A model generated the notes under the pieces. The model had not been told where the DNA came from. It did no database searches and was given only the letters and a program-made list of their open reading frames with translations. Below are positions 16,475 through 46,555 of a DNA stretch of 64,000 nt, piece after piece (position 1 is the first letter of the stretch; each line of letters starts with the position of its first letter). The translations under genes were made by a program, and so were the position numbers. Source of the DNA: Paramoeba atlantica (taxonomy: Eukaryota; Protista; Discosea); assembly GCA_977017575.1 (NCBI GenBank), contig CDRNVI010000047.1, positions 248,001 through 312,000 on the forward strand, written 5' to 3'.

Positions 16475-16502
16475 ATAAAGATACAGTTTCTGTACCTTGT
16501 TG
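16475..16502 (+). ncRNA. spliced-leader exon copy (28 nt) at the 5' end of the LINE
   Basis: ATAAAGATACAGTTTCTGTACCTTGTTG aligns to positions 12-39 of trypanosomatid SL exons; followed directly by a 39-nt 5' UTR and the ATG. Confidence 0.85.
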
Positions 16503-19500
16503 AATTATTTTCAATTTTGTACTAACTTTATCTTCCGGAGCATGGCCTCCAATGTCACCTCACCGGCTCCCATCGCGCACGACGGCCTCCCTCGAGGACC
16601 TGTCAGCGCGCAGCGACATCCCCAGAGCTTTCACTTCATCCAAAGTCGAGCGATGCCCGTCAAAATCCGCCCCTCGGACAGCGTCACATGGTCATATTTC
16701 CCAGACACGCATGCCGCAGCCATTGCCCTCACAGAACGAGAGTTCTTCTCGAGTGTCCACACGGCTGAAGCCTCGATCGGCAAAACCTTGAAGTCGGAAA
16801 GCAAAAGAAGTGATGGTCTGATAATCAAATCGTGTACAATTCAAGATGTCATTGAAAACAACGCATGTGAACACCTAAAATACCAAGAAACGGGAAACCC
16901 AAGTCGCACGTTTTGTCACGCCAGCTGGAGTTCCGCCTACAGGGATTCGTTCATGCAGCTTAACGCAGTGTACTCCTCTTCGAACGCGCTCGGCAAAGCG
17001 GTCACGAAGAAATTATGTGGTAGTGACATCCCAGGATTACGAAAATTCCAAATCACACACGTAACTCGAAAAACACAACCCATTGAACTACTACGGGGTC
17101 ACCCAGAGATCACCTACGACGCACCCTATAGGATCCGAGATGACTCTTACAAGGTGTCACCGCCATCATATGCCTCAAAACACGCTCTCGAACCACGTGC
17201 CTCATGCGCTTATAAATGCCGGGACAAAACATCGTGTCTCCACGCATGTTGCAAAGTACGACACGAAGGATCTCTTCCGCCTAACGTGTCTCTTCCCTCT
17301 CCCGAGGACGTTGCCCCTATGGAACCCTCACTTACTTCTCACAGAAGACCGTGCAAACACACATGCCGCGACAAAAGAAATTGTCTGCACAAGTGTTGCA
17401 AAGTGGGGGTCCCCATTACAATGCCCAAAGTAGTCCTCAACCAGTGCTACCCCTCGTGGAACCACCCATAGCTCGAGCAAGTAGTCCACTACCAGCAGAC
17501 TTATCCATAGACACCGATCAGCATACCACACCAGACATCGGACACTTCGAAGAGGTCAGGGATCCGGAGCTCCCGACCGTAAATCCGCCCTCACTAGGAT
17601 GCATGGATGACGCCACACACCACACACAAACATCAACCAATGAAGTCAATTATCGCCCCTGTCGGCACATATGTAGCAACAAAGCTCAGTGCAAGCATCG
17701 ATGTTGCAAAAATGGTGTCATACAACCTAGCACGGAGGTTGTACTCCGCGAACCCGTCCGTACCTCTCCAGACCTGCACACCAGCAATGACAACAACACC
17801 CCTGCCCCAACAGCCCCTCGTCGCAACTGCGCTCATAAATGTAAGGACAAGGCAACATGTAAACATCAATGCTGCCAGAAAGGAGTTCTCCTCAAAGTCG
17901 CTGAAGTAGCGTACTCTGCCATATGCTGGACCACGAGAAATATACTGTGCCCTGCAATGGGTGATGCGGAACGCGCCGCAAAAGCTTCACTACCGCCCCC
18001 TCCACGCGCAACAACCTACCCCCCAGTTCACACAAACCCCTCGAATCGCTCGAGTCCAATACTGAGCCCTGTGCGGAATGCACCACTTGTCCACGCCCCG
18101 CAACATGATTCCCCTTCTGTACGCCGCTCCTCACCTTCTTTACCCCTTGTGCAGTCCGCAACAGATCCCACGCCTCTGCCCTTACCTTTACCTCCCCCAC
18201 CAGAAGGAAACTGCGAACACACGATATTGCAGCGCATCCCTCGTGTCCGGTAAGTCCCGGCTACCCGACCTCTCCCTGAACTGCAGAACCTACTCGAAAC
18301 ATTCCGCACAATGAATGGAGGTCGCGTTTTAGTCCGTTTCACAGAGGAACAGTGGGAGAGTATTATTGCGAAGATCGAGGAACGCTGCAACTCGTATATC
18401 CACCTGGCGCGAAACAAAGAGGACGCCCTGTCGCAAGCTGAAATACTCTCAGCAATCCTCGCTGTAACTGCATTCGAGGCCGCACGGGAAAACGATCCGA
18501 CGCACGGCTTTCTTATACGGACCAGAACTGGCAGAGCCCGAAGAAACTCACGACCCTTAGCCATTGAACGCACAGTGAAAGTACTCAGTCAACACGTTCG
18601 ACAACTTAAACGTGCGCTAACGTTCATGAAGGGTCCTGCGAGAAACAAGCAACGAGGGAAAATAAAGGAAGCCGAAAAGGCACTAAAGCAGTAAATGGAA
18701 GAATCCAGTATGCAGAGGAAAGAAATCGATCGACGGTGGGCTCTTACGCGATTCCAGCGAAATCCCTGGACAGCCGCGGGCGAATGCTTAGATCGCGTCG
18801 ACCCATCTACCTCAGAAACTGAGACGTCCTACCCTACAGTTCCTGTACAGGAGGTTGAAAGATTCTTTGTGGGCTCAATGTCTAGACCAGAAGAGATACA
18901 CAAGATTCCTCCCGCAGAATTTACGAAACCAATTCCCCTTGATGAGATGCAATGGTCAGATATTGACTCAGACATGATCGCAGCAGCCGTCGCATCCAAA
19001 CGCTCTGGGGCTGCCCCAGGCTCGGACACTGTATCGAACGCGCTGCTAAAGCGCTGCGCCCCTGTCTTTACTCACATGGCACAGGTGTTTAATGATGTCC
19101 TAAAATTTGGTGTATGCCCTCCAACCTGGAAAACTGCGGTCACTCGACTTATCCACAAAGGGGGCCCCACCTCAAGTATGGAAAACTGGCGGCCGATAAG
19201 CTTGACTAGCTGCATTGGGAAGCTTTTCCACTCAATCCTCAGTCACCGTATCCTTCAGCATTCCCTGGATTCCAATGCCCTGGACACAACAATACAAAAA
19301 GGCTTCTTGCCGCATATGAATGGGACAGTTGAGCACACCCAGGTCCTTTGCGAGCTCCTCGAGCACCAGCGGCGCCACAAAAGGCAATACGTGCTTGCCT
19401 AGTTTGATATCAAAAACGCGTTTGGATCTATACCCCATACAATTTTATTTCAGGCCTTAAAATGGGCGCGCGTCTCACCGATCCTCATTAACTACATCAA

Positions 19501-21321
19501 AGCGCTGTACGAACGAGCGTCTATACAAATTAAATGTGCAGAAGGACTCACGAAGTCTATTGAGATAGGTCGTGGTGTATTGCAGGGAGATACGCTTTCA
19601 CCTATTTTATTCGACTTGGCGATGGAGCTAGTTCTGCGTTTTGTCCGTTCAAGTTGCCCCGAATACGGGATCACGTGGAATGCGAAAGAAATTTTTCTAA
19701 AAGCCTTCGCAGATGACCTCACTATTCTGACAAATACCCCCCAGGAAATGCAGAATGCTACAAACGCACTCGTCAAAGTTCTAAGCGATATTGGGATGAA
19801 ACTAAACGTGAAAAAATGCCGGCTGCAACACATGGCGATGACGCAAGACTCTGGATATATGACACGCCGACCACAGATCATGATCGGCACGTCACCTATC
19901 CCACACATATGTGATAATGGTAGCACATTTTTAGGCATGACGCTCGCACCCGGTGCTCAACAAGGCAAGACACTCTTTCTAAAACTACGAACCCGTCTGC
20001 GAGCCTGGTTGCGTAATATATCTTCCAGCGCACATGACCTTCCCGCGCGCCTGTGGATATACAATAACGGCATCATCTCTCGTCTGCGGTATTCCTTCGT
20101 CGTGAACTCATGCCTTACCTTCAATCACGTACTTCGTCTACAGCGATGCGCCACACGCGAAATTCGGAAATGGTTAAACGTAGCGAAATCAGCAACTAGT
20201 GAGCTGCTCTATTCAGAGCATGGCTGGAATCTCATGAGTCTGTCAAAACTTTGGCTTCTTTCCACTGTGGGGACAATGGAACAAATGGATAAATCGCGTG
20301 ATCCCGAGGTCCAGCACGCTTTACGTGAGCGCATCAGGCGAGAAGCGAACAAAAGGAGAGCAGGATACATTCGCCCGCCGACGGATATGCACAGTACAAG
20401 CCATAGTAACGTCCGAAGACTCCTTGGAAGCGAATACGAGCGACACCTCACGGAAGCCGTCCAACGGCGTACTGCCGTAGCAGGACGATGGTTCAGAATC
20501 GCAACGGAAGCAGACCTTGCGAGAGTCTTCGCCGCCGCCCTATGCAACCTCAAGAGTGAATCGCTTTCGCGGTTCACATCCTCAGTGCTTACCGAGACGC
20601 CGCTCCCAACCAGGGCATCTCTTCGTAGGTGGGGCGTATCGACATGCGAGCGATAAATGTCCCATATGTGACACTGAGACACAAACTACGCGGCATATTC
20701 TATCTGGTTGTAGGAAGTCACTCGAACAAGGGAGGTATACCCTACGGCATAACATGGTACTACAGGCATTAGCGAACTCCGTACAACGATTCTCCTCCAC
20801 TAGTCAATGTCACTTCGATCTCCCCCACTTCCGCTCCACCCCCGCGTGGCTCACGAACCTTGATACTGAGCTACGTCCTGACGGATGGGTGAAACTATCT
20901 AACGGAGAAGAATACATTATAGAACTTACCTGCCCTTGGGAGGAGAATTTTGAGTTCGCACACGAGCGCAAAATAGAAAAGTACACGAGTTTATATCACT
21001 CTAGAAAACTCGACCATCCTACCACATTCCTACTCGTCTTCGAGGTGGGAGCGAGAGGCAAACTGCATATGTCGGCCCGAACGCTCAACTCTCTCTACAT
21101 GGGAAATGAAGAAGCGGTTGCAGTGTGTCGCCGAAATATGACGAGTAGCGCTCTCCGGGGAAGTTTCATAATTTTCCAGCACCGCGAGAACAAACAGTGG
21201 ATGGAGGTTAGTTCTGGGGAGTGAGTCGCTGACTGTCAGGTGATTTCAACGCGTTTTGTGCGCGTAATATGGAACTCCCATATTCACCGTCTGATCTCTG
21301 TAGAATATTTTCTACATGATA

Positions 21322-21348
<27 letters not shown>
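16475..21348 (+). mobile_element. full-length, decayed RLE-type non-LTR retrotransposon (HERO/NeSL-like) with a 5' SL exon and an (AT)n tail
   Basis: Reconstructed ORF 16542-21224: RT motifs NWRPISL, QKGF, DIKNAFGSIPH, LQGDTLSP, AFADD, LNVKKC; CCHC CPIC..HILSGC; RHN; endonuclease LRPD..IELTCPWE..ERKIEKY. In-frame stops at 18251, 18692 and 19400; frameshifts near 17440 and 20645. Confidence 0.93.
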
Positions 21349-21352
<4 letters not shown>

Positions 21353-21414
21353 CTTTCAACAATTTTGAAGGCAATATTGATTTTAGTGCGCTACCTGCAT
21401 CTCTTCGGACGATG

Positions 21415-21993
21415 ATAAAGATACAGTTTCTGTACCTTGTTGGTACTTTTTCCTTAGTTCATCCTTTCTTTCCCCGGCAACGGGCATACTCTTACTGTAT
21501 TTTCATGCCCGTTGCCGGCCGGCACTAAGGTCGGAACTGTCCCTCTTGTCGCTGAAGCAGGGGACGCGCTTTCACCACTTCACCCCTCCCCGACTCACTC
21601 CCCTGGAGTGAGTGTGCTTCCCCCTCTCGGCTTTTTTTCGACTTGTCTTTTTCCTCTCCGAGAGGGCCATGCGTCACGGTGGCCTCCCTTGAGGACCACT
21701 AGACGTGTCCTCCGCCGACGAGACTCGGCTCTCTGCACCTGGCGGTCGCCCAGCTCACCGCACCTCGGCTCTGTCGCAGCTCTCTGCACCCGGATTGCCC
21801 TCGAAACTGTAATATGGGGATTACGCATCCGGCTCTCTGCACCTGCACATGACAACCGAGCTCTCTGCACCTGGGACGCCAGCTCTCCGCACCCGCACAC
21901 CTCCGGCGAGGACGAAACCTCACATGGTCCACCCGTCGTATGCGGGATAAGGACATGGTGAGCAAATCTCTGCACTATAAGTGCATGATAAAA
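21415..21993 (+). mobile_element. SL-RNA-headed SINE-like element, type A, copy A1
   Basis: SL exon plus GTAC, a 14-bp hairpin at 21474-21518, internal CTCTCTGCACC repeats, and 3' ATCTC-TGCAC-tataa-GTGCA-TGATAAAA; interrupts an LRR frame. Confidence 0.88.
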
Positions 21994-22318
21994 CACATAC
22001 ATAACAATGTGAAATTGCGGGGCAACCTACAAATTGTAGGGGCACATGTGGACATGATCTACGATGTTTCCGAAACGGAAATTACAGTTAGCAACAGTTG
22101 TGGCGCGCTGGAACAATATATTATGATGTGATTGGTAGGGAAAAAGTAGGGGGGGGGGGAATTCTCGGTATGTTAACCTGTAACCCGTTTAATACATTAG
22201 TCTACCCTGTGTGAGTGGTATAGTCAACACCGTACACATTCTCCTATTTTTTACTCTCACACTTTCTTCACCCGTACTTTACCTAAGCTTTTATCTGTTC
22301 CCCCAACTCCGATATTTC

Positions 22319-22951
22319 ATGTCCGGCCTACGCTCGTGGGAAGGGGTGACATGTGACGAGGAGGATCACCCGGTTGCGCTGCGCTGGTGTGCCTTAGGAC
22401 TCGGTGGTACGCTTAGTTGGGATTACCTCCCCCAGCGTCTGGTACGCATTGACGTCAGTCACAACAACCTGCGAGGCCCAGTAAACCTCCGCGAGGCCCC
22501 AGAGTGTTTAGAAGAGCTCAATCTTTCCCACAATGCCTTCACGGGGGAATTTGATCTCACTCAGCTCCCCCCGGAGTTGAAAAAACTTTATCTCACCGAT
22601 AACCAATTTGAGGGAAAATGTGACCTGAGCTCACTACCCCCTTCGTTGACTCGGTTAAGTGTGGGATTCAATCATTTTTCTGGTGAGGTTGGTTTGAACG
22701 ATTTGCCGAGGACGTTGCAAAGTCTGATGCTGTCGTTTAACCAGCTGGAGGGGGAGTTGGATATGAGCGATTTGCCACGGGATATGGAGGAGCTCTACGT
22801 TAGGAACAACAAATTTAATGGTAAATGTGACCTTTCGGAGGTTGTTAAGCGAGGTCTTAAGGTGGATGTGTCATTTAACAGGTTTACGGAGATTGTGCAG
22901 TCAAACAATACGGCATCCGAGAATATACAAATTGGTCACCAGGACGAATAA
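22319..22951 (+). CDS. LRR protein (member 6; lacks the N-terminal VRG/PxEY motif)
   Basis: WEGVTC cap remnant plus regular LRRs; start uncertain. Confidence 0.82.
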   Translation: MSGLRSWEGVTCDEEDHPVALRWCALGLGGTLSWDYLPQRLVRIDVSHNNLRGPVNLREAPECLEELNLSHNAFTGEFDLTQLPPELKKLYLTDNQFEGKCDLSSLPPSLTRLSVGFNHFSGEVGLNDLPRTLQSLMLSFNQLEGELDMSDLPRDMEELYVRNNKFNGKCDLSEVVKRGLKVDVSFNRFTEIVQSNNTASENIQIGHQDE

Positions 22952-23254
22952 AATTTGTCATGTAAGGTAGTGGGTTTGTATTTGATCGTGATAGAATGGA
23001 ACGACATTTGATATATCTCAAACGTCAGGGAACAATGTAGATGGTAATTTCTTCCGCGGATAGAGATCGAAATGAGATCATACAAAAAATCCGCGAGATG
23101 CACGAAATCACACACATTACATCCGCAACCTATATTTGTACTTTTAAGACTGCAAAAAATGCAAAGCTTTTTTCTAGCGACAACAGTGAGACGACAATAG
23201 GTCGTAGAAAACCCAATCAATCTTTTTTTCTTTCCGTTCTGTACAACGAAGATA

Positions 23255-23833: not shown

Positions 23834-24117
23834 AATGAGATGTCTCAAAAAAATGTGACAAGGAGAAAATGGAAATCTGTGAAAAAAAGTAAAGTCTTTC
23901 AACAAATATTTACACTCAAGACAATTATTTGTGTAACAAAAAACAGGAAAACAACAATTTGTGAATTTTTTATTGTGCAACAATTTCAGAAGTTGCACAA
24001 TAGAAAATTCACAAATTTTTGCGAACGTTGTACTGCTCCCTCTTTCTTATCTTTTCATTCGCAACCCATCTTTCCCCACACTTTTCCTCTCTCCCACTTC
24101 CCCTTACCCCTACCCCC

Positions 24118-27399: not shown

Positions 27400-28131
27400 A
27401 CTATTGTGAGTGCGTTTAAAATACATTTCTGGTTTGTACGACGTCGTTTTCTACATGTTTTGCTGGGTACTTCTTATGTACAGGAGAAATAACCTCATCA
27501 GATAACATAACAGAATCTGGGAAGGATAACAGAGTCTGTTCCGCGATGCGGTACATGTAGGATTTGACGCGACAAAACACAGTCTAAAAGGATATCACAA
27601 TGGATTAGTCAAGATATTCAAGTTGCTGTGATACATTTTGGTATATTTTGGCATTCACAAAACATTCTTTATTCGCGTCGTCTATTAAAGGTATACAAAA
27701 TTTACACTATTACTTGTGCATTTAGTATTTCCACTACGATGAATGTGATTTTCACAGATCGCACGACAGACTCGCTACGTCTGCCTTATCATTCCGTCAT
27801 GTTTAAGTTCTCCGACACAGCGGGCGAAAACAGAAAGGCCGGGAAAGTAAGGGGTGTGGCATTACCCTTGGAGTACGAGCTTGAGCGTTTGGTAAGTAAC
27901 ATAGTGAATCCGCTTCCTTCTTGGAACACCTCCGTACCTGCACACCAGTGGGAAGGGGTTGATTGTTCGGGCGGAAGGGAAATCTTGGGGTTTGTGGCGA
28001 AAGGGAAAAGATTGATGGGTTCATTTCAATGGAGTACACTGCCTAGGTCTCTACTTGAATTTTCAGTGTACAACAACAAGCTTAGCGGGGAATTAGACCT
28101 CGTAGGCCTTCCACCGCGTTTGATTTCGTTG

Positions 28132-28700
28132 AAGATACAGTTTCTGTACCTTGTTGGTACATTTTCCTTTAGTTCATCTTTTCTTTCCCCGGCAACGGGC
28201 ATAGTCTTACTGTTTATATGCCCGTTGCCGGCCGGCACTAAGGCCGAAACTGTCCCTCTTTCTCGGCGAAGTAGGGGACGCGCTTCCACCCCATCACCCC
28301 TCCCCGGCTCACTCTTTGATTGAGTATTCTTCCCTCCCCGTATTTCTTACTTTCGCGCCTTTTCCTTCCCGGGGAGCCATGCGCCATGGTGGCCTCCCTT
28401 GAGCACCACTGGGCGTGGCTCTGCCTCGTCTTATCGCGAGGCAGCGGTCGGTTGCAGTGCGCCCCTCCGGCTGCGTAAAGAGGTGGTGAGTTGCCTGGAC
28501 CACCTCTACCGACTGGGACCGAGTCGGTTGCAGTGCACCCCTCCGGCTGCGCAAAGAGAGGGCGAGTTGCCTGGACCCCCTCTACCGACAGAATCCGTGC
28601 TAAACCCCCTTGGTGCGACATCCGTCATTACGGATTGTGCCGATGATATCGGCTGTCGCATCAAGGGCTGTATCTCTGCGCCAACGAGCGCATGAGCATC
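28132..28700 (+). mobile_element. SL-RNA-headed SINE-like element, type B, copy B1
   Basis: AAGATACAGTTTCTGTACCTTGTTG|GTAC, same head hairpins as A1, duplicated ~64-nt internal unit, 3' ATCTC-TGCGC-caacga-GCGCA-TGA. Confidence 0.88.
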
Positions 28701-28770
28701 AAACGTCGTACAATCAATTTACGGGTAGTATTGATCTTTGTCATCTTCCTGCAACCTTACTTTCGTTGAT

Positions 28771-29208
28771 TCAGGGGACGCGCTTCCACCCCTTCATCCC
28801 TTCCCGACTCACTCCCCTGGAGTGAGTGTGCTTCCCTCTCTCGGCTCTCTTTCTCGTGTCTACCTTTCCGAGGAGGTAATGCGTCACGGTGGCCTCCCTT
28901 GAGGACCACTAGGCGTGTCCTCCGCCGACGAGACTCCCGGCTCTCCGCACCTGGGGGTCGCCCAGCTCTCTGCACCTCGGCTCTGTCGCAGCTCTCTGCA
29001 CCCGGATTGCCCCCGAAACTGTAATATGGGGATTACGCATCCGGCTCTCTGCACCTGCACATGACAACCGAGCTCTCTGCACCTGGGACCCCAGCTCTCT
29101 GCACCCGCACACCTCTGGCGAGGGCGAACCCTCACTTGATCCGCCCGTCGTATGCGGGCACGGACTTTGTGAGCATAATCTCTGCACTATAAGTGCATGA
29201 ACGAACAA
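28771..29208 (+). mobile_element. 5'-truncated SINE-like element, type A, copy A2
   Basis: Starts at CAGGGGACGCG inside the head and aligns to 21557-21990; joined flanks give TTG ATA CTG as in the paralogue, so no TSD. Confidence 0.88.
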
Positions 29209-29723
29209 ACTGTCAGTGAATAAGTTCTGCGGTGATGTAACGCTTACTAATCTGCCTTCTAGAATAGAGAGTCTTTCGCTTCGTAACAACGCCGAGCTCA
29301 CGGGTACAGTGCACGTACGCTTACTACCGTCAAGCATGAGGTGCAAAGCATTTACTGAAACTAAAATTTTGCAACTGGACTGATCACTGAAATAGCACAT
29401 ACTGTAGGCACATACTGTAGCACATGTACTGTAGGACTCATTGCGTGATTGTGAAAATTTTATTCATAAAAAGTAATTTTTTTCGAAATCTGCTTCTGTA
29501 TCGTACTTAGAGAGTTTGGAACTTCAGATAGCCTTCTACAAAGCTTTTTTCATGTGATTAATTCATGTGTTATTAATTTCATGTGTTAATTAAATTAATA
29601 CGTCTTTTGTTGACATAACTTAGTTTCTCCCCGGTAATATCGTAATTGAATATTTGACTGTAATTAAAATTGCTGTATGAAAAATTTGTTGCACGGAATT
29701 ACCAATTGGAAACGGACTCCTTT

Positions 29724-30383
29724 ATGATCGTAGCTTCTATTGCATTCAGTGTTATTATCACAGATTGTACGGCAAGTTCTTTACTTCCCTCTTATCATCC
29801 CAAAGCATTCGAGTTCTCTGACACAGCGGGTGAGAGCCGAAAAGCGGGACGAGTAAGAGGTGCTTTACTTCCCGCAGAGTACGAGCTTGAGCGTTTGATA
29901 AGTAACATAGTGAATCCGCTCCCTTCTTGGAATGCATCTGTACCTGCACACCAGTGGGAAGGGGTTGATTGTTCTGACGAAGGAAATATATTAGTGTTTG
30001 TGTCCGAAGAAACTAATTTACGTGGCACACTTTTGTGGGATGCACTACCGAGATCTCTACATCGATTCTCAGTATTCACTAACCAACTTACGGGGGGGAT
30101 TGATCTCGTAAATCTTCCGCCACATTTATCTGGTTTTGACGTATCTTACAATCAATTTACGGGTAGAGTTGATCTCTCCCACCTTCCTTCAACATTATCT
30201 TCCTTGATATTGTCAATGAATAAGCTAAGTGGGCAACTAACTATTGCCAATCTTCCCTCCGGACTTCTTAGTCTTTCACTTCGTCACAACGCTGAACTTG
30301 TGGGAACGATTTCCGCGCAACTGCTACCTGAAAGCCTGACGTACAAGGCCTTTCAAGGGACAAAACTTCAAATACAGAATTGA
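29724..30383 (+). CDS. LRR protein (member 10)
   Basis: RVRGALLPAEYELERLISNIVNPLPSW plus LRRs. Confidence 0.9.
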   Translation: MIVASIAFSVIITDCTASSLLPSYHPKAFEFSDTAGESRKAGRVRGALLPAEYELERLISNIVNPLPSWNASVPAHQWEGVDCSDEGNILVFVSEETNLRGTLLWDALPRSLHRFSVFTNQLTGGIDLVNLPPHLSGFDVSYNQFTGRVDLSHLPSTLSSLILSMNKLSGQLTIANLPSGLLSLSLRHNAELVGTISAQLLPESLTYKAFQGTKLQIQN

Positions 30384-30462: not shown

Positions 30463-31341
30463 TTTAGGCTCTTCGTTAAACGCGGTGGTTGTTTTCAACT
30501 TAGAAGTCACTCATGCTGCGCGCTTCGCGTTGAAAACTACCACCGCGTATAACGAAGAGCCTAAAAAAGAAAAATTGGCTAGGAAAGCTGAAGAAAACGG
30601 AAGGATTTGAGCCAAAAATGGCCGATTTTTAGGTAAAAATGGGGTCATTTTTGGGTATTTTTGCTCTCAGAGCACTAAATTCGACTTTTTCGTGTGGGAA
30701 ATCACTCGTACGCATGTATTCGAGGCTACCAAACGTATTGGGTGGAGGATGCGGCTCCAACCACACCATTCTTTTGACACAAAAAGACCCCTTTGGGTCC
30801 GAAAATTACTTTTTCGCATTTCTTGGTCAAAAACGAGTCATTTTCGGAGGCGTACCACGGCTTCAAGAAGCTACATCTCGCGAAAACAATGGCGTAAAAA
30901 GCTAATATAGGTCCCAAACTAGCAAAATACAATAGGCGAAACAATTTTGGAAAAATACTTTTTTTACCATTTGTTTCGTCAAGTTGAAATTTTTTTCAAA
31001 AAACAAAATCCGAAAAAATCCGAACTTGACGGACCTGTCCTACGCATACGAGGGGGGGTCACCCCCGGGTAGGGGGGTGGAAAATGCGCGCTAAGACCCC
31101 GGCTACCACTTCTGCGCTTTTATTTCGAAAAATAATTTTTTCAAAAAAAATTCGTGCGGTATGCCCCCCCCATGGACCCCCCAAGGGTCCGATTTTTTTT
31201 GATAATGTTTGGACCACCGGAGCCCCTTTTATATTTTTTTCTTCTATTATATTACTGTGTTCCTCTTTATATTTTCACTGTTTTTGTTCACTTTTTTTTC
31301 AATAATCGAGGGTAGAGCGGTAGTTTTACAACCACCGCAAT
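30463..31341 (+). mobile_element. ~880-bp non-coding element with a long terminal hairpin and a related short hairpin at the other end
   Basis: ~35-40-bp stem AGGCTCTTCGTT..CAAC / GTTG..AACGAAGAGCCT; other end GCGGTAGTTTTACAACCACCGC; full copies recur at 54782-55688 and 63117-64000. Confidence 0.8.
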
Positions 31342-38152: not shown

Positions 38153-38472
38153 GCTCTTACATGCATTATCCATGCGTTCCTATCCTTGAAAGTTTTATTA
38201 TTTTCCAATGTTAATAATCCAGAAAAACGTATAAGAACGGCTCCCGGTGTCATCCGCACGGTTGAAATCACAATACTAACTTATTGAAGACTTGCATTCA
38301 AATACTTGCACGACTGTCATTGCCGCGATTTATTCATTATTTTCTTTGATTTCTTTTTTTTATCTTTTGCTCTTGAGTCTTCTTCACTTTCTTTCGAACC
38401 CCACTTACGGACTATAAAATAAATTTTGGCGTACTTTTGATGTCTTTTCGTTCATTTAAGTAATTCTTTTTC

Positions 38473-38880
38473 AGGCTCTTCGTTAAACGCGGTGGTTGTT
38501 TTCAACTTAGAAGTCACTCATGCTGCGCTCTTCGCGTTGAAAACTACCACCGCGTTAAACGCAGAGCCTAAAAAAGAAAAATTGGTCAGGAAAGCTGAAG
38601 AAAACGGAAAGATTATAGCCAAAAATAGCCGATTTTCGGGTAAAAACGGGGTGATTTTCGCGTATTTTTGCTCTCAAAGCACTAAATCTGATGTTTGCGT
38701 GTGGGAAATGACTCGTAGGGATGAAGCAAAGCCTACCGAACGTGTTGGGTGGAGAATGCGACTCCAACCACACCATTCTTTCGACACACAAAGGCCCCTT
38801 GGGGTCCGAAAAATACTTTTTCACCTTCTTTGGTCAAAAATGTGTCATTTTGAGGGGCGCACCACCGCTCGAAGAAAGGA
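38473..38880 (+). mobile_element. partial copy of the long-hairpin element
   Basis: Hairpin at 38473-38575 plus body aligning to 30570-30870. Confidence 0.8.
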
Positions 38881-38934
38881 TACACCTTGTGAAAGGATGT
38901 ACCTTGTGAAAACAACGGCCGAGAAATATTAGTA

Positions 38935-39113: not shown

Positions 39114-39407
39114 TAAGCTTAAAAACTCATAGGCTGGTCCTGTACTAATCTCGTTTTACGAACGCTATCTAGGGTAACAAACGGTGGGAAACGCGCTAGC
39201 TTTTTTTGAGATCTGTTGAATGCCGAAGGAATTGGGTCAAAATCTCTTACGGTGTGCTCTGGAGCCTGGGGGTGGGGGGGAGCAAGCCAAGAGCTGGACT
39301 GTGTATGATTGTGCTGCTTTGTTTCTAAAACAATAAGGCGAGTGAGTCTGATACCGTTTATGTCTTTTCCGTTTTATTTTGATTTTGAGTTTATATTCCT
39401 GCTTCTG

Positions 39408-42400
39408 ATGAAAATAGAAGGACTATTGCAACAGTCGGTGAGGCATTACTACTCTTTGGATCCTTCCATGAGTGTAGAAGCGGCCTTGCAATTCATTTAT
39501 CGAAATGCACAAGCGCGTCTTCGTCAGATGGTGGGGCACACTCTTGCTGCTGAGAAGCAGTCAAGCGACAGTTCTGCGCAGCCCGGGGAAGAGACCCTTC
39601 GGGATGGAAGTCTGACCTTAGAAGCCGAAAAGGCGCTTTCAGAATTTAATGAAGCCGCTTATTTGGGTCAACCTTCGAAACATCAGGAATGTTATAACTA
39701 CATTGAGCCCATTGCCAAGCATCACGCAATGTACGAAATTTTCGAAGGAGATTTACTAAATTGGTACATCGCTTTGGGAATCAATGCCTTGCTATCCGGA
39801 TTCTCAAGGCGACAACTTGAAGCGACGGCAAGAGGCATTGGGTTACCGACGAAACACATTCAGCCTGCAGCACGATGGACGTTGACATGCTTTATTTCCC
39901 GTTTATCTTTGGACGGGACGTTTTGTAATCTTGTTTCTATTGCTCACCGACCTGAGACTTCACATCCCACGAGTGAGCTTGCACAACCAACGGAGCCTTC
40001 GGAATTATCCGTAGAGGCGCCGGTTTCAAGCGATCTAGCCTTTAATGCACAACCTTTAGCACAGTCACTCGTCATGGACTCAGATCCATCCAATTTAAAA
40101 GCATCAACTGCTACCCAAGAATCTGCACTGCCAACTGAATCAACACCCCCACCCTCCAAAACCGCACTTCTTACAAATCTCGCTCCTTCTACGTCTTTTT
40201 CATTAGCCTCTTCTGCCAATCTTTCGGCCACTGGAAAAGACAGCTCCTTTGAGACACCCCCGGCACGACCCTCTCCTACCTCACAATTGCGCTCTTCTCC
40301 GTTAAGTTTGTTTCCCGAAACCCATCCCTCCCCGAATGATGCAACTCCTACCAGCATCAACCCCCCTTCCAGCCGCAAAAGAACATTTCTTGCCAAAGTA
40401 GACAACACTTTTGGATTGTCCTCGACCAAAAAAAACAGGATAACAAAATCCCCCACATCATCCGAAACCCCAGAAAAGGGACAAGAAACCAAAACAACCC
40501 CTACCCGCCCGTCGAAAGCTCGCAACTCTCGCACCCTCAAAGACACCAACCCCAAACCTCCCCGTCCAAGCCATAAAAAACAAAAAACAACTTCACTCCA
40601 ACCCAACACCACATTCTCTACCCCTTCACCAACGCAACCTAACAACAACAACAACAACAGCCCCTTCGTCTCCCTATCCACCATAACAACCCTTATCCCC
40701 TCCGAGACTCCCCGTCCCCTCTCTACACCCCCCATGGCCGCTACCCCTACACCCCCTATGGCCACTGCGGCCTCTACCCCCACAAGTCCTATCGCCACTA
40801 CCCCCACAAATACCATCGCCACTGCGGCCTCTACCCCCACAAGTACTATGGCCGCTCCCCCCACCCCCGATGAGCTCATCGCCCTCTGCACGGACCCCAG
40901 CCGCTCCGTCCCCGTCCACTGGGTCACCTCCGCCGACCCCCCCGTCCCCGCCGCCACGGCCCACGCCATGCTCACCGCCCCCGCCCGCGTCCCCCACGCT
41001 ACCCTGGTGGCGCACCGGCCCCCGATCGGGCCCGACACCTCGGCGTGGCAGCTGCTGCAGTGGTACCGGGTGGGGGAGCTGGAGGGGTACGCGCGGGGGA
41101 GGGGGGTGGGGTGCGGGGGGGCGGGGAAGCGGCGGGGGAGGCTGGTGGGGGCCCTGCTGAGGTACTGGGGGAAGGGCGGGGGGAGGGGGAGGGGGGGGAG
41201 GGAACGGGGGGGGAAGGGGGAGGTGGTGGGTGGGGAAGAGGGGGAGGTGGTGGGTGGGGAAGAGGGGAGGGGAAAGGAGGAGGGGGGGGAAGGGGAAGGG
41301 GAGAAGGGTTGTGTAGGGGAAGAGAGGGAGGTGGTGGGTGGGGAAGAGGGGGTGGTGGTGGGTGGGGAAGAGGGGGTGGTGGTGGGTGGGGAAGAGGGGG
41401 TGGTGGTGGGTGGGGAAGAGGGGGTGGTGGTGGGTGGGGAAGAGGGGGTGGTGGTGGGTGGGGAAAAGGGGAGGGGAAAGGAGGAGGGGGGGGAAGGGGA
41501 AGGGGAGAAGGGTTGTGTAGGGGAAGAAAGGGAGGTGGTGGGTGGGGAAGAGGGGAGGGGAAAGGAGGAGGGGGAAGGGGAAGGGGAGAAGGGTTCTGTG
41601 GGGGAAGAGAGGGAGGTGGTGGGTGGGGAAGAGGGGGTGGTGGGTGGGGAAGAGGGGGAGGTGGTGGGTGGGGAAGAGGGGAGGGGAAAGGAGGAGGGGG
41701 GGGAAGGGGAAGGGGAGAAGGGTTGTGTAGGGGAAGAGAGGGAGGTGGTGGGTGGGGAAGAGGGGGTGGTGGGTGGGGAAGAGGGGGTGGTGGTGGGTGG
41801 GGAAGAGGGGGTGGTGGTGGGTGGGGAAGAGGGGGTGGTGGTGGGTGGGGAAAAGGGGAGGGGAAAGGAGGAGGGGGGGGAAGGGGAAGGGGAGAAGGGT
41901 TGTGTAGGGGAAGAAAGGGAGGTGGTGGGTGGGGAAGAGGGGAGGGGAAAGGAGGAGGGGGAAGGGGAAGGGGAGAAGGGTTCTGTGGGGGAAGAGAGGG
42001 AGGTGGTGGGTGGGGAAGAGGGAAAGGAGAAGGGGGGAGGGGAGAAGGGTTCTGTAGGGGAAGAGAGGGAGATGGTGGGTGGGGAAGAGGGAAAGGAGAA
42101 GGGGGAAGGGGAAGGGGAGAAGAGTTCTTCTCGGGGAGATGAGGGGGGTGGGGAGGAAGTGGAAAAGGGGGAGAACGAGGGGGGGAAGTCTTCTCGGGAA
42201 GAAGGAGAACTCGAGAGGGAGGAGGAAGAAGAAAAGGGGGGGAAAGAGGTTGTAGTGATTTCGCAGGATGTGTCGCAAGATTCGGCGTTGCGAGAGGTAT
42301 CGCAAGGCGGTATTTTTTCGGAAAATGGTGGGGAGAAGGAGCGAGGCGGGGAGAAGGAGCGAGGCGGGGAGAATGGTACAGAGGCGGGTGCAGGGGTGGT

Positions 42401-42434
42401 GGAGATGGATCACATTTTGGGTGATCCGGCTTAG
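39408..42434 (+). CDS. hypothetical protein with P/T/S-rich middle, possible SAP-like motif and G/E/V-rich tandem-repeat tail
   Basis: ~1000-aa ORF; globular N-terminus; [32 protein letters not shown]; EGVVVGGE and [13 protein letters not shown] repeats. Confidence 0.7.
41190..42130 (+). repeat. G/A-rich hierarchical minisatellite (GGTGGTGGGTGGGGAAGAGGG units)
   Basis: 21-nt units nested in larger ~400-nt duplicated blocks. Confidence 0.9.
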
Positions 42435-42809
42435 CAGGGGGATCGACTGCAGAGAAGCTGCATCCCGAAGGACTAGGTGAGTCGGAAATGAGAGACTCAA
42501 ATGTGCACGACGTTGAAGGAAAGAGATCAATGCCCGAAAGCGAGAGTTCTCCTCCAGACCTTCATTGAAAAGAGGTTTGCATGGGATCCCTTGTCTTAAA
42601 ACTCTCTCTTGTCTTAAAATCTTTAAAAGGAGATTTTTTTGTTAAAGTACCATATTTATGTTTTCTGAAAATGGTATCATTTACATTATTTTGAATACAT
42701 ATCTTAAAGAGTAGTTCTGGAAAATCTCGTATTTGTGATGTTATACATGTTCTGGTTTGCAAGATTAAGATTTCAAGATACGATTGTCAAGAGCCTCCGA
42801 TAAAAAGAC

Positions 42810-43960
42810 GTCGAAGTTCCAGTCCTACCATCGATTATCTTTCGTCTTCGCAATCTACAGGAGTCCACCTGAGCACGACATGCTGAGGGTGGTATGTCCG
42901 CCCTTTCCATCTTGACCCTCTCCCACAACTCTCGGACACCTCTTGGGGGATCATAGTGTGCTGCAAGGCGCCGCTTGAGTCTCAATGGGATTAAAGTCAG
43001 GGGATTGCGGGGGCCACCGCACAACTTCAATCCTGGTACCCCGAAGGTACCGTTGCGCACAACGGATTGCTCTTGGGGTCGTTATCTTGTTGGGAGACAG
43101 CCTTGGAGGATTTAGACCGATACTTTCGATAGAGGGGAAAAGATTCTCAAGAATCTTCAGGTTCCCTTGAACCAGAGTTGTTTTTTTCATGCACTTATAA
43201 TGCAGAGATTTGCCTCACTACATGTCCTTACCCCGCATACGACGGGTGGATCACGCGAGGGTTCGCCTTCGCCTGTGGCAAGTGGGTGCAGAGAGCTGGC
43301 GTCCCAGGTGCAGAGAGCTCGGTTGTCATGTGCAGGTGCAGAGAGCCGGATGCGTAATCCCCATATTACAGTTTCGGGGGCAATCCGGGTGCAGAGAGCT
43401 GCGACAGAGTCGAGGTGTGGAGAGCTGGGTGACCGCCAGGTGCGGAGAGCCGGAAGTCGTAGCGAAGGACACGTCTAGTGGTCCTTAAGGGAGGCCACCG
43501 TGACGCATTACCTCCTCGGAAAGGTAGACACGAGAAAGAAAAGCCGAGAGAGGGAAGCACACTCACTCCAGGAGAGTGAGTCGGGGAGGGGTGAAGGGTG
43601 AAAGGCGCGTCCCCTGCTTCAACGAAAAGAGGGACAGTCCTGACCTTAGTGCCGGCCGGCAACGGGCATATAATTACAGTAAGACTATGCCTGTTGCCGT
43701 GGAAAGAAAGGATGAACAACAAGGTACAGAAACTGTATCTTTATACACATACCCCACACCGCTTCAGGACATACGTCCAAATCATGATGTCCTCCCCTCC
43801 ATATTTCACCGTAGGGATCACCCCTTTTCCACCTAGTTCCTCCCCAGGAATCCCTCATGCACAAAGACCTCCCCGTTTGAAAGCGCGAGATATTGGTCTC
43901 GTCCGACCACACAACTGGGGCCCAGTACTCATGGGCTGTAGCAAAGTACTATTTTTTACA
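42810..43960 (-). pseudogene. Tc1/mariner (DDE) transposase remnant interrupted by SINE A3
   Basis: Minus-strand motifs VVWSDET, PTVKYGG..IMIW, QQDNDPK, WPPQSPDFNPIE, ELWERV; several frameshifts. Confidence 0.85.
43178..43744 (-). mobile_element. SL-headed SINE-like element, type A, copy A3 (spliced form)
   Basis: Reverse-strand SL exon at 43717-43744 joined directly to TTCATCC; the 15-nt GT..AG segment of A1 is absent; same 3' hairpin plus A-rich tail. Confidence 0.88.
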
Positions 43961-44183
43961 AAGATCTACAAAATGCAACAAAAATGAGCAAAAACGGATA
44001 AAATAAGAGAATCAAAATTTCCCAGGGGGGCGCACTTCTGAGAAGGGGTGTATTTCCGTTTCGTGTTTCTGGGGACTATACTATTCGCAAAGAAACCATA
44101 CTTTGAATGTGAATAATAACCTTGAGGGTGGTATACACAGTCACAAACCTATTCTCAACCACCCACATTTTCACACCCCCACC

Positions 44184-45005
44184 ATGTACCCCCTATCCCT
44201 CGCGGACTCTGCCCGACCCGCACGGGTCCGGGGGGCTCAGCTTCCCCCTGAATACGACCTCGACCGGTTCCTTGGCGATATCTCTCCTCGTCATCCCTCC
44301 TGGACCCTCTCCCGTCCCGTGGACCAGTGGTCCGGGGTGTACCTGGACAAGGAACGCCACCACGTGTGTCGTATCCGGTGGGATGACCGCAAGCTACGTG
44401 GTCGCCCCTTGTGGACCCACCTCCCTCCCACCCTCACCTCCCTAACCCTTGGCACCGCCCAAGGGGGGAATGCCCTGGACGGGGCTGTGGGGTTCGCCTC
44501 CCTTCCCCGCTCCCTGTGTGAGCTGCAACTCACCCATAACCGGTTCAGTGGGCCGTTGGCAACCCGGAACCTCCCGCATGAGTTGCGGGTGCTCGCTGCG
44601 GTGGACAATGTCCTCGAGGGGACACTAGAGTTGGCTGAGCTCCCTGTGGGGATAAGGGAGGTGTTGTTGTCCCGGAACCGGTTCCACGGAGCCGTGAATC
44701 TCTCCGCTCTCCCGTTTAAGATTCGTATGTTGACACTGTCGCATAATGCGTTCACAGGGTCGGTGGGGTTCTCGGCGTTGCCGCAGTCTATGGAACAGCT
44801 TACGCTGTCGCATAACCAGTTAAGTGGGGAGGTGGAGATTCGAAATCTCCCAGCAGGGTTTATGCGACTGCTTGCTTCCCACAATCAGTTTAGTGGAGTA
44901 GCTGTGCTGGAGAAGATTCCTTCCGGTGTGATTCGGGTGGATTTGTCGTGGAATAAGGGTCTACGCGCGCCGAAGGAGTTCGTGCCCTCTTGTGTGGAAT
45001 TTTGA
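44184..45005 (+). CDS. LRR protein (member 12)
   Basis: RVRGAQLPPEYDLDRF..PSW..WSGV plus LRRs. Confidence 0.9.
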   Translation: MYPLSLADSARPARVRGAQLPPEYDLDRFLGDISPRHPSWTLSRPVDQWSGVYLDKERHHVCRIRWDDRKLRGRPLWTHLPPTLTSLTLGTAQGGNALDGAVGFASLPRSLCELQLTHNRFSGPLATRNLPHELRVLAAVDNVLEGTLELAELPVGIREVLLSRNRFHGAVNLSALPFKIRMLTLSHNAFTGSVGFSALPQSMEQLTLSHNQLSGEVEIRNLPAGFMRLLASHNQFSGVAVLEKIPSGVIRVDLSWNKGLRAPKEFVPSCVEF

Positions 45006-45194
45006 AGCGTTGCAGTTTGTATTTGTTTAATGGGGTAAAGGTGATCATTTCAAGGTGAAGGAAAAACCCTGAAGTAAAATTAGCGCTTTGGAAATACATA
45101 TTGTATCCGCCGACAATCCGCACTTTTTTATACTAAACGTTACAAGTACGATATTACTTTTTCGTTTCATTCATCAGAACTTTGCTTCATATGT

Positions 45195-46555
45195 ATGCTC
45201 TGTCACACCTCTGACATTTCGACACAGCCTAGACTGCCGTCTAAGGTGCGAGGTGCAGAATTGCCTCAAGAATACGATCTCGCACGATTCATTGAGCATA
45301 CTCAAAATACAGATCCCTCATGGACCACATCAACAATTGCGTGTAATTGGCGTGATGTAGAATGTGATGACGGCATGCACGTTACTGACCTTAACTGGAA
45401 ACGTCCTGGGGAAATTGCGGGAACGCTGCAATGGAATTGTCTACCCCACACATTACTCAGGTGTTACATATGGTACAGCCGTTTGACAGGAAGGGTGGAG
45501 CTTGAGGCACTGCCACGCCAGCTTGTTGTCATGCATAAAGATACAGTTTCTGTACCTTGTTGGTACATTTTGCTAGCCCTTCCTTTCTTTTCCCGGAAAC
45601 GGGCATACATTTTCCTTTTAAATGCCCGTTTCCGGCTGACGGCTAGCGGAAACTGTCCCTCTTTGTCGTGGAAGTAGGGGACGTACTTCCGACTTTTCAC
45701 CCCTCCCCGGCTCACTCCTTGAGTGAGTTTTCTTCCCTCCCCGGCTTTCTTCTTCTCGCGCCTGTCTCTTCCCGGGAGCTATGCGCCATGGTGGCCTCCC
45801 TTGAGGACCACTGGGCGTGACTCTGCCTTGCATTATCGCGAGGCAGCGGTCGGTTGCAGTGCGCCCCTCCGGCTGCGTAAAGAGATGGTGAGTTGCCTGG
45901 ACCACCTCTACCGACTGGGACCGAGTCGGTTGCAGTACGCCCCTCCGGCTGCGTAAAGAGAGGGCGAGTTGCCTGGACCCCCTCTACCGACAGAGTCCGT
46001 GTCGAACCCCCTTTGGCGACATCCGTTGTGGGCGGATTATGTGCCGATGATATCGGCCGTCGCAGTAAGGGGATTATCTCTGCGCCAAAGAGCGCATGAT
46101 AAACAAAAATTTGGCATAACTCATTTGTTGGAAACATAGATTTAGCACTTTTGCCTAGCTACTTGGAAACAATGTTTCTGACCAACAACATGTGTACGGG
46201 AAGCATAGACATGACGCACCTTCCTGCTAAGTTATTATACCTTGATCTATCTTACAACGCATTTTCAGGAACTGTGGATCTAGCAAGCTTGCCCCGCGGC
46301 TTGTGTTCTCTCAATTTGGCTCAAAACGACCTTACAGGGACTATAAATCTCCAGCAGTTTCCTTCAACAATGACAAGCTGTCAATTCCAACTTAATTCTT
46401 TCAGTGGTCTTGTAAAGTTTGACAAACTTCCACAAAGCTTGTTGTTATTGCGCTTAAATGGCAATTCGGAGCTATACGGTGAACTAAAGAACTCTGATCT
46501 TCCTCAAGCAATGGCCGAATTCGATTATTGTGGGACAAACATTTGTTTAAAGTAA
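45195..46555 (+). pseudogene. LRR gene (member 13) split by SINE B2
   Basis: KVRGAELPQEYDL..LPRQLVVM to 45534, then IWHNSFVGNIDLALLP..TAA from ~46107. Confidence 0.9.
45535..46106 (+). mobile_element. SL-RNA-headed SINE-like element, type B, copy B2
   Basis: Full 28-nt SL exon plus GTAC; body aligns to B1; 3' ATCTC-TGCGC-caaaga-GCGCA-TGATAAACAAAA. Confidence 0.88.

What the first reader, a model, noticed from the sequence alone, without database searches (positions are those of the whole stretch)
16475..46106. Candidate new LINE/SINE system: SL-RNA-headed short retroelements mobilised by an SL-capped RLE retrotransposon
Seen: five 0.43-0.58 kb non-coding inserts (21415-21993, 28132-28700, 28771-29208, 43178-43744 on the minus strand, 45535-46106) interrupt LRR genes or a Tc1 remnant. 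Four begin with the SL exon core. They share a ~300-nt head, have two different bodies (types A and B), end in short A-rich tails, and one is 5'-truncated. The autonomous-type element at 16475-21348 begins with the same 28-nt SL exon and ends in the same 3' structure. Known: trypanosomatid non-autonomous retroposons (RIME, NARTc, SIDER) derive from ingi/L1Tc, while SLACS/CZAR/CRE and nematode NeSL insert into SL genes. Inference: here SL RNA itself has become the head of a SINE family, which I do not recognise as described.
Basis: partly seen in the sequence, partly recalled or inferred. Interest (0 to 1): 0.95.

Follow-up and report, generated by a model that had tools for sequence, protein, structure and literature searches.

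The report
Spliced-leader-headed LINE and partner retroposons
In this kinetoplastid genome, an R2-like jumping gene and two families of short non-coding passengers are copied back into DNA from trans-spliced RNAs, so each copy starts with part of the cell's spliced leader; the passengers are not derived from the spliced-leader RNA gene itself.

Summary
Five 0.44-0.58 kb non-coding inserts and one 4.9 kb RT-bearing element sit at the stated coordinates. Five of the six start with the last 28 nt of the spliced-leader (SL) exon, and all end in the module ATCTCTG-hairpin-ATGA plus a short A-rich tail. The central inference does not hold. I found the real SL RNA genes in 2.56 kb SL-5S arrays on other contigs. 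Their intron (GTATGAGAAGC...) shows no similarity to the head of the short elements (z = -0.5 and -0.9). Only the exon is shared, and exon relics also head other, unrelated retrocopies in this genome.

What is there is a LINE with non-autonomous partners. The LINE has RT, a CCHC motif and a restriction-like endonuclease (RLE) whose model matches R2 structures. Open-frame copies exist elsewhere in the genome. LINEs and partners share three things:
- a 3' hairpin that co-varies;
- a 5' boundary at SL nt 11-13;
- a bias for one phase of leucine-rich-repeat (LRR) units.

Window copy A2 and 18 others carry the SL joined at a downstream AG acceptor, and 16 loci carry double relics. Both record repeated trans-splicing of DNA-encoded copies.

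This scan has already reported the same system on other pieces of this genome. No RNA data were available.

The parts
16475..21348 (+). R2/CRE-like RLE LINE, subfamily 1. The window copy has a broken frame. It lies in sense orientation inside an LRR gene.
   Evidence: RVT_1 fragments are found. Copy L018 is 98% identical and has an open 1561-aa frame with RT, CCHC and RLE. Read contigs show an extra G at 17420 and an extra AC at 20641, the two frameshift places.
16475..16502 (+). SL exon relic (SL nt 11-38) at the LINE 5' end, followed by the 5' UTR AATTATTTTCAATTTTGTAC... and the start codon
16568..16616 (+). Conserved box of about 32 nt near the start of the ORF, shared with the short elements (GGCCTCCCT[C/T]GAGGACC core). 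It can form a hairpin.
   Evidence: The local alignment gives z = 6.3. The proposed pairs are 91% paired but show no significant covariation.
21294..21319 (+). LINE 3' module ATCTCTG-GTAGAA/TTCTAC hairpin-ATGA, followed by TAACA(TA)n
21349..21414 (+). One LRR unit of the host gene left between the LINE and copy A1
   Evidence: Repeat family D8 and the paralogue comparison.
21415..21993 (+). Non-autonomous element type A, copy A1: SL nt 11-38 | GTACTTTTTCCTTAG... head, A body, 3' module at 21966-21988, tail TAAAACA
   Evidence: BLAST gave 514 first-look candidates, and the 40 that were scored are 89-100% identical.
28132..28703 (+). Non-autonomous element type B, copy B1. Its SL relic starts at about nt 13-14.
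   Evidence: BLAST gave 490 first-look candidates, and the 40 that were scored are 93-100% identical.
28704..28770 (+). One LRR unit of the host gene left between B1 and A3
   Evidence: (D8)
28771..29208 (+). Type A copy A3, 5'-truncated with no SL. A clean insertion at GTTGAT^ACTGTCA.
43178..43744 (-). Type A copy A2, the re-spliced variant. The SL is joined directly to TTCATCC, which is the exon side of the CCTTAG| acceptor 15 nt into the parent head.
   Evidence: One search shows the 16-nt gap. There are 19 such copies genome-wide, in both the A and B lineages.
45535..46106 (+). Type B copy B2, with a diverged head variant
   Evidence: A relative with the same head variant carries the SL from nt 3 (L047).
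7420..7680 (+). Uninterrupted paralogous LRR gene stretch, used as an empty site. Others are at 11760-12020, 30050-30310 and 49140-49400.

Best explanation
The window holds one copy of an R2/CRE-like non-LTR retrotransposon. It has a single ORF with N-terminal Cys/His motifs, RT, a CCHC motif and a C-terminal restriction-like endonuclease. The window also holds five copies of two families of non-coding retroposons (A and B) that this LINE lineage mobilises in trans.

Shown here:
- The short elements and four diverged LINE subfamilies end in the same module, with invariant ATCTCTG and ATGA around a 5-bp hairpin that co-varies.
- All of them begin inside the SL exon, mostly at nt 11-13.
- Insertions have almost no target duplication.
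- Insertions favour one phase of LRR repeat units, in sense orientation.
- The part of the head that follows the exon is not the SL RNA intron.

Inferred:
- The elements sit in polycistronic Pol II units and are transcribed by read-through.
- Their RNAs receive the SL by trans-splicing.
- The LINE protein binds the 3' hairpin and copies the RNA by target-primed reverse transcription. It may also bind the shared 32-nt 5' box, by analogy with R2.

Two genomic records show that DNA-encoded copies are transcribed again, spliced again and re-inserted:
- 19 copies have the SL moved to the first AG downstream of the relic (CCTTAG|TTCATCC), in several A and B lineages.
- 16 loci have double relics, with the SL joined at the relic's own ACAG| or AAAG|.

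Reverse transcription, or the template itself, ends about 11-13 nt from the cap. The evidence is that relics ending at a newly formed SL junction are truncated there, and that short stutter duplications at 5' junctions all restart at A11-A13.

Two things remain unexplained: why the boundary lies at nt 11-13, and how the majority junction SL|GTAC is preserved without an AG.
For: - **SL gene and intron:**
- **No similarity between intron and head:**
- **Copy numbers and youth:** 514 and 490 first-look BLAST candidates for A and B. The 40 scored for each are 89-100% and 93-100% identical. There are 828 SL cores genome-wide, against 0 for the control pattern.
- **LINE protein:** RVT_1 at 1.9e-33. 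Best solved relatives are R2 structures (8gh6, E 8.5e-34). The motifs CPIC..H..C, RH, RPD, ELT and K..KY are conserved across 15 homologues. The C-terminal model (pLDDT 82) has R2 proteins as its top 7 structural matches (E 7e-7 to 1.6e-4).
- **Open frames of 1358-1637 aa in six copies:** L018, L049, L054, L055, L058, L060.
- **3' hairpin:** 90.9% of cells paired, 4 of 5 pairs with a change on both sides, covariation score 0.676 against 0.316 in shuffles (0 of 500 reach it), slid controls at most 0.19.
- **5' boundaries:**
- **Re-spliced variants:**
- **Double relics:** (L038; L058, L060).
- **Target phase:** an Asn-x-Phe/Leu-x-Gly codon motif starts 16-29 nt after ATGA at 14 of 33 A/LINE sites and 5 of 18 B sites. 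The background in this LRR-rich window is 1-5%.
- **Clean insertions against paralogues:**
Against: - No RNA data could be obtained. The runs that hold this DNA are DNA contigs, and the one possible RNA run held nothing. Transcription and trans-splicing of the elements are therefore inferred from DNA only.
- The majority junction SL|GTAC does not follow an AG, and no AG|GTAC source copy exists in the assembly.
- The prediction that LINE copies spliced at the AG just before the start codon would exist failed: 0 matches.
- No LINE with the type-B hairpin sequence was found among the subfamilies sampled.
- The 5' box is conserved in sequence, but its structure is not supported by covariation.
- The LRR bias is partial and was measured against one LRR-rich window, not the whole genome.
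Confidence: 0.75

Rival explanations
1. One reading: the short elements are SINEs whose head is the SL RNA itself (exon plus intron), as tRNA, 5S or snRNA genes head other SINEs.
For: The SL exon is followed by GT in types A and B (TTG|GTAC), which resembles a 5' splice site. A true retrocopy of the whole SL RNA exists elsewhere in the genome (L003), so SL RNA can be reverse-transcribed in this organism.
Against: The real intron is GTATGAGAAGCTTCG... Only GTA is shared, and the alignment score is below the shuffle mean (z -0.5 and -0.9). The first 10 nt of the exon and the gene's upstream region are absent. The same relic heads coding LINEs and unrelated retrocopies. There are no Rfam or ARAGORN hits in the heads.
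Confidence: 0.04
2. The SL relic is a fixed, inherited part of the elements, for example a cis element for transcription start, processing or protein binding. On this reading it is copied from DNA each cycle and is not re-acquired by trans-splicing, and the boundary at nt 11 is the start of the element's own RNA.
For: - About 90% of copies keep the same non-AG junction (192 SL|GTAC against 19 re-spliced).
- No AG|GTAC source copy exists.
- LINE subfamilies that differ by 25-30% all keep a perfect relic starting at nt 11-14.
- The stutter duplications suggest a physical RNA end at A11-A13.
Against: - Copies of the same young families reach SL nt 7 (L069, L071) or nt 3 (L047), which a relic starting at nt 11 cannot template.
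- The re-spliced variants and double relics show that new SLs are added to element RNAs and are then truncated at the same place.
- No ribozyme or other known RNA family is detected at the 5' ends.
Confidence: 0.17
3. Artefact or ordinary SL array: the inserts are fragments of tandem SL RNA gene units, or chimeric joins made by the assembler.
For: The SL sequence is highly repeated, with very high read-contig depth over the relic. No listed record spans the whole 6-kb stretch.
Against: - Genuine SL genes lie in 2.56 kb SL-5S arrays on other contigs, with a conserved upstream region and a different intron.
- The same element structure recurs at dozens of loci with unique flanks on many contigs.
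- Paralogous genes in the window give exact empty sites.
Confidence: 0.01

Closest known systems
CRE clade (SLACS, CZAR, CRE1/2) of trypanosomatids
   Same: Both are kinetoplastid non-LTR elements with a single ORF, RT and a C-terminal RLE, and both are associated with the SL sequence. CRE-clade elements are reported in Bodo saltans (PMC4728078, PMC12278014). The relic here keeps exactly the last 28 nt of the SL. From my own recollection of the 39-nt T. brucei SL, that is the part downstream of the SLACS/CZAR insertion point 'between nucleotides 11 and 12' (PMC5814959).
   Different: These elements are not inserted in SL genes. None of about 45 insertion sites examined is an SL gene. The SL sequence lies at the 5' end of the element rather than flanking it. 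Tails are short mixed A/T repeats, not poly(A). Placement in a phylogeny with CRE reference proteins was not done.
R2 and its non-autonomous derivatives (SIDEs)
   Same: Best sequence and structure matches are to R2 proteins. Shared features are RLE-type insertion with little or no target duplication, a structured 3' end, variable 5' junctions with small duplications, preference for a repeated target, and non-coding partners that keep the ends of the LINE.
   Different: The target is not 28S rDNA. No HDV-like ribozyme was detected. The partners are not simple internal deletions. They share with the LINE only the SL relic, a 32-nt box and about 27 nt at the 3' end.
Relict spliced leaders of dinoflagellate retrogenes
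   Same: DNA copies of the SL lie at the 5' end of retroposed sequences. Tandem partial relics arise when a new SL is spliced to an AG inside the old relic (PMC5585692, PMC6050394; here).
   Different: Here the carriers are an active LINE lineage and its high-copy non-coding partners in a kinetoplastid. The relic is truncated at a characteristic position, nt 11-13.
RIME/ingi, NARTc/L1Tc and SIDER of trypanosomatids
   Same: These too are non-autonomous, non-coding retroposons of kinetoplastids that depend on a LINE and are not Pol III SINEs.
   Different: Those belong to the APE-type ingi clade, share the Pr77 5' signature, and produce transcripts without an SL (PMC5814959, PMC8190864). The elements here partner an RLE-type LINE and carry the SL.
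SINEs with small-RNA heads (tRNA, 5S, 7SL, snRNA 'SINEU')
   Same: Short size, high copy number, and a 3' end shared with a partner LINE.
   Different: No head derived from a small RNA gene and no Pol III features were detected. A T7 run lies inside copy A1. Only the SL exon is present, acquired by splicing.

Membership tests
RLE-type (R2 superfamily) non-LTR retrotransposon | Reverse transcriptase domain of the non-LTR type | tested here: met
   RVT_1 at E 1.9e-33 in L018. Best solved relatives are R2 proteins, E 8.5e-34.
RLE-type (R2 superfamily) non-LTR retrotransposon | C-terminal CCHC motif plus a PD-(D/E)XK restriction-like endonuclease, and no APE domain | tested here: met
   Conserved C..C..H..C, RH, RPD, ELT and K..KY motifs. 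The model has pLDDT 82, and its top 7 PDB matches are all R2 proteins. There is no Exo_endo_phos hit.
CRE clade (SLACS/CZAR/CRE) | Site-specific insertion in SL RNA genes at a fixed point of the exon | tested here: not met
   Insertion sites are LRR genes and other loci. The SL-5S array units examined carry an antisense B copy in the spacer and an APE-type LINE downstream of the gene, not this LINE in the exon.
CRE clade (SLACS/CZAR/CRE) | Placement of the RT inside the CRE clade in a phylogeny | not tested
   No named CRE, SLACS or CZAR protein came back from the homology search, so no reference sequences were at hand.
R2 clade proper | Insertion at the conserved 28S rDNA site | tested here: not met
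   None of the sites examined is rDNA.
Canonical SINE | Head derived from a Pol III gene (tRNA, 7SL, 5S) with an internal promoter | tested here: not met
   No tRNA was found. There are no Rfam hits above noise in the A or B heads. A T7 run lies inside A1.
Canonical SINE | 3' end shared with a partner LINE | tested here: met
   Shared ATCTCTG-hairpin-ATGA module with covariation. The LINE subfamily L055/L058 hairpin differs from the type A hairpin by one base.
   Comparison of the intron with the heads gives z -0.5 and -0.9.
Relict-SL retrocopies (dinoflagellate type) | SL relic at the 5' end, and tandem relics from re-splicing at an AG inside the relic | tested here: met
   828 SL cores. There are 16 double relics, 11 at ACAG| and 2 at AAAG|.

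The most novel reading that the evidence does not exclude
The boundary at SL nt 10/11 may not be a passive stop. The LINE's endonuclease domain has a PD-(D/E)XK fold, and cap-snatching nucleases appear among its weak structural neighbours. This domain, or an SL-binding domain inherited from an ancestor specific for SL genes, may cut the SL-headed template or the new copy at the position where CRE-clade elements cut SL genes. Combined with a preference for one phase of LRR units, the system would then be an SL-gene-specific lineage that escaped to a dispersed protein-coding repeat and now reshapes a surface LRR gene family.
Probability: 0.12. Interest if true: 0.85.

Novelty: new variant of a known kind. 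Interest (0 to 1): 0.62.

Why it matters
- **An unusual partner.** Non-autonomous partners of RLE-type LINEs are rare. As far as the papers I could search show, none is described that is a trans-spliced Pol II transcript, and none in kinetoplastids outside the ingi clade.
- **A DNA record of RNA processing.** The genome records, in DNA, how element RNAs are processed. It shows acceptor choice at the first AG after the relic, re-splicing into relics, and a sharp 5' limit about 11 nt from the cap. This gives a testable handle on how an R2-like enzyme deals with a hypermodified capped leader.
- **Effect on host genes.** The bias for one phase of LRR units, in sense orientation, means the elements repeatedly interrupt a large family of LRR genes.
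- **Correction of a tempting misreading.** The SL at the head is a splicing product, not a captured SL RNA gene.

Tried and rejected
- **SL RNA origin of the head.** Rejected after finding the real gene.
- **Self-cleaving ribozyme or other known RNA at the 5' ends.** Rfam at the gathering threshold over the whole window, and at E up to 5 over 16400-22100 and 28050-29300, gave only noise. A 6-7 nt complementarity between relic AAGATA and the LINE UTR TATCTT was noticed, but it is absent from A and B, so I dropped it.
- **tRNA-like head.** None found.
- **A source copy with a canonical AG|GTAC acceptor.** 0 matches.
- **LINE copies spliced at the AG before the ATG.** 0 matches.
- **A test of whether APE-mobilised copies keep a near-full SL.** I looked for near-full-SL copies of the APE-type LINE found in the SL array. 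The pattern hit only 5 units of an unrelated tandem array, so the test was uninformative.
- **RNA evidence.** The only runs served were DNA contigs plus one empty possible RNA run.
- **Sequence match of the C-terminal domain to solved structures.** None by phmmer. The fold search was needed.
- **Covariation in the 5' box.** Not significant.
- **Old SLACS and CZAR papers on how target duplications are laid out.** Not held in the library.
Full report
**1. What is in the window**

The 20-nt SL core occurs five times in the window, against 0.01 expected by chance. It lies at the 5' end of four short inserts and of one 4.9 kb element.

The alignment of the five short inserts and the repeat table show their structure:
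- A common head of about 300 nt.
- Two unrelated bodies. Type A: 21415-21993, 43178-43744 on the minus strand, and the 5'-truncated 28771-29208. Type B: 28132-28703 and 45535-46106.
- A common end, ATCTCTG, a short hairpin, ATGA and a short A-rich tail.

The long element 16475-21348 starts with the same 28 nt and ends with the same module. Its reading frame is broken in the window.

Uninterrupted paralogues of the host LRR gene lie in the same window. They show that 28132-28703 and 28771-29208 are exact insertions with 0-3 bp of duplication or loss.

**2. The real SL RNA gene**

The window's genome is 45.7 Mb in 248 contigs. It holds 828 copies of the 23-nt SL core, against 0 for the control pattern.

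Copies with a complete exon followed by GT include tandem arrays of period about 2.56 kb on contigs C97, C107, C11 and C74. Each array unit also carries a 5S rRNA gene. All units share the same upstream sequence and read:

AACTTTAACGATAAAGATACAGTTTCTGTACCTTGTTG | GTATGAGAAGCTTCGAACTCTAAGTTCGC...GGGGCTTATTT

The exon is therefore 38 nt as read here, and the elements in the window carry its nt 11-38.

After the exon, the short elements continue with GTAC(T/A)TTTTCCTTAGTTCATCC.... Local alignment of the intron against the A and B heads scores below the mean of shuffles (z -0.5 and -0.9). The heads give no tRNA and no Rfam match above noise.

The claim that SL RNA itself became the head is therefore not supported. 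Only the exon is present.

**3. SL heads are a general mark of retrocopies here**

SL exon relics head many kinds of copies in this genome:
- All 14 copies sampled from diverged LINE subfamilies.
- An APE-type LINE inserted in an SL-5S array unit.
- Unrelated sequences with their own UTRs and start codons, several of them in A-runs.
- One retrocopy of the whole SL RNA, with intron and A tail (L003).

This is the kinetoplastid counterpart of the relict leaders of dinoflagellate retrogenes (PMC5585692, PMC6050394).

**4. The LINE**

A 98% identical copy, L018, has an open 1561-aa frame. It contains:
- Four N-terminal CxHKCxDKxxCxHxCC motifs.
- An RT domain (RVT_1, E 1.9e-33).
- A CCHC motif.
- The motifs RH, RPD, ELT and K..KY.

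Its best solved relatives are R2 proteins. A model of the last 272 residues (pLDDT 82) has R2 proteins as its seven best structural matches, followed by other PD-(D/E)XK nucleases.

Open frames of 1358-1637 aa also exist in L049, L054, L055, L058 and L060. No APE domain is present. This is an RLE-type, R2/CRE-like LINE.

Published surveys list CRE-clade elements in Bodo saltans (PMC4728078, PMC12278014). The SL-5S arrays and the LRR genes fit a bodonid, but I did not establish the species.

**5. Evidence that the short elements are its partners**

(a) *The 3' module.* Eleven distinct 3' ends were aligned: four LINE subfamilies, one further element end, and A and B variants. ATCTCTG and ATGA are invariant. 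The 5-bp stem is paired in 90.9% of cells. Four of five pairs change on both sides. No shuffle reaches the covariation score, and all slid controls are far lower. The hairpin of LINE subfamily L055/L058 (GCACT ATA AGTGT) differs from that of type A by one base. No LINE with the type B hairpin was sampled.

(b) *A shared 32-nt box.* It has a GGCCTCCCT[C/T]GAGGACC core. It lies near the start of the LINE ORF and about 250 nt into A and B (z 6.3). It can form a hairpin, but covariation is not significant. Its role as a second protein-binding site, as in R2, is only an analogy.

(c) *The same 5' boundary.* See section 6.

(d) *The same target.* At 14 of 33 A/LINE sites and 5 of 18 B sites, an AAY-NNN-YTN-NNN-GG motif (the Asn-x-Phe/Leu-x-Gly codons of an LRR unit) starts 16-29 nt after ATGA on the same strand. 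The background in this LRR-rich window is 1-5%. In the window, the LINE and A1, and likewise B1 and A3, hit the same phase of two successive units.

Types A and B are abundant and young. BLAST gave 514 and 490 first-look candidates. The 40 scored for each are 89-100% and 93-100% identical.

**6. The 5' end**

A, B and LINE copies begin mostly at ATAAAG or AAAG, which is SL nt 11-13. The ends are ragged, reaching down to nt 20. A few copies of the same young families reach nt 7 (L069, L071) or nt 3 (L047).

Many 5' junctions carry short stutter duplications whose units all restart at A11-A13. Examples are L068, L072, L105/106 and L061.

Unrelated retrocopies, several of them in A-runs, start at nt 2-3. 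The limit at nt 11-13 therefore belongs to this LINE system and is not a general block in the leader.

From my own recollection of the T. brucei leader, the 28 nt kept here correspond exactly to the part downstream of the SLACS/CZAR insertion point between nt 11 and 12 (PMC5814959). I cannot tell whether this is chance or descent.

**7. A DNA record of repeated trans-splicing**

Window copy A2 lacks the 15 nt GTACTTTTTCCTTAG (16 alignment columns). Its SL is joined directly to TTCATCC, which is the exon side of the first AG after the relic in the parent sequence.

Nineteen such copies exist. Some are young A copies 98-99% identical to A1, some are older A copies, and some are B copies. The event has therefore happened several times.

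Sixteen loci carry double relics. In eleven the SL is joined at the relic's ACAG|, and in two at AAAG|. Examples are L038, L058 and L060.

In the re-spliced copies, and in the double relic of L060, the relic that ends at the new junction (the outer one in L060) is again cut back to about nt 11-21. DNA-encoded copies are therefore transcribed, spliced again and re-inserted, and the truncation happens during retroposition.

**8. What remains unexplained**

- About 90% of A and B copies keep the junction SL|GTAC, which does not follow an AG (192 against 19). No AG|GTAC source copy exists.
- LINE subfamilies have the SL joined at different points of homologous UTRs, again without a visible AG.
- LINE copies spliced at the AG before the start codon were predicted and not found.
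- No RNA data were available.
- The read contigs show an extra G at 17420 and an extra AC at 20641, the window copy's frameshift places. These may come from other copies or may point to consensus errors in the assembly.

**9. Verdict**

The anatomy is real and the LINE/partner relation is well supported. The SL-RNA-derived head is not supported.

The system is best described as an R2/CRE-like LINE with trans-spliced, non-coding partners and a bias for LRR units. It is a new variant of known kinds.

This scan had already reported the same system on other pieces of this genome. This report adds:
- the real SL gene and the formal intron test;
- the hairpin covariation;
- the re-spliced A2 class;
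- the census of double relics;
- the LRR phase bias;
- the structural confirmation of the RLE.

Noticed in passing
L003 (G000:C6:25588-28625), minus strand around locus position 1500: A retrocopy of the whole SL RNA: exon from nt 3, the genuine intron, then an A tail (GGGGCTTAAAA instead of GGGGCTTATTT). It lies away from the arrays and lacks the gene's upstream region.
   Followed up: partly
L013 (G000:C107:1500-7200), about 735-1000 and in each further unit: Every 2.56 kb SL-5S array unit carries a type-B element in antisense orientation in the spacer. That insertion was therefore amplified together with the array.
   Followed up: partly
L083 (G000:C74:106800-114300), 455-5145: A 4.7 kb APE-type LINE (Exo_endo_phos plus RVT_1) is inserted about 340 nt downstream of an SL gene, with a target duplication of about 21 bp. 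It starts with only the last 8 nt of the SL (CCTTGTTG).
   Followed up: partly
window 17420 and 20641 (also 18688, 18694): Contigs of three DNA runs all carry an extra G at 17420 and an extra AC at 20641, the LINE's frameshift places. They also carry other letters at 18688 and 18694. These are either other copies or consensus errors in the assembly.
   Followed up: no
window 41016-42191, inside ORF 39309-42434 (+): A GC-rich tandem repeat with a 12/24-nt period, about 30 registers, lies inside a 1041-aa open frame with no Pfam match.
   Followed up: no
window 30463-31341, 38457-38883, 54782-55684, 61831-62719, 63118-64000: Another repeat family is present in direct and inverted copies (families D6, D7, D9, D10, D15, D17, D18; I1-I4, I8-I25), with G-runs and GGTCCA motifs. 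I did not identify it.
   Followed up: no
window 47165-48445 (+): A nucleosome assembly protein (NAP) gene, Pfam E 2.9e-52, lies just downstream of the region.
   Followed up: no
L019 (G000:C30:206039-213891) and L035, L047, L048: Elements often land directly on the tail of another element, for example a B copy right after a LINE tail and an A copy right after a B or A tail. This gives head-to-tail chains.
   Followed up: partly
G000:C18:35317-43706: A tandem array of period 2087 bp in which each unit starts with a near-complete SL relic (CTTTAACG...TTG|ATTAAGTAA). I did not identify it.
   Followed up: no
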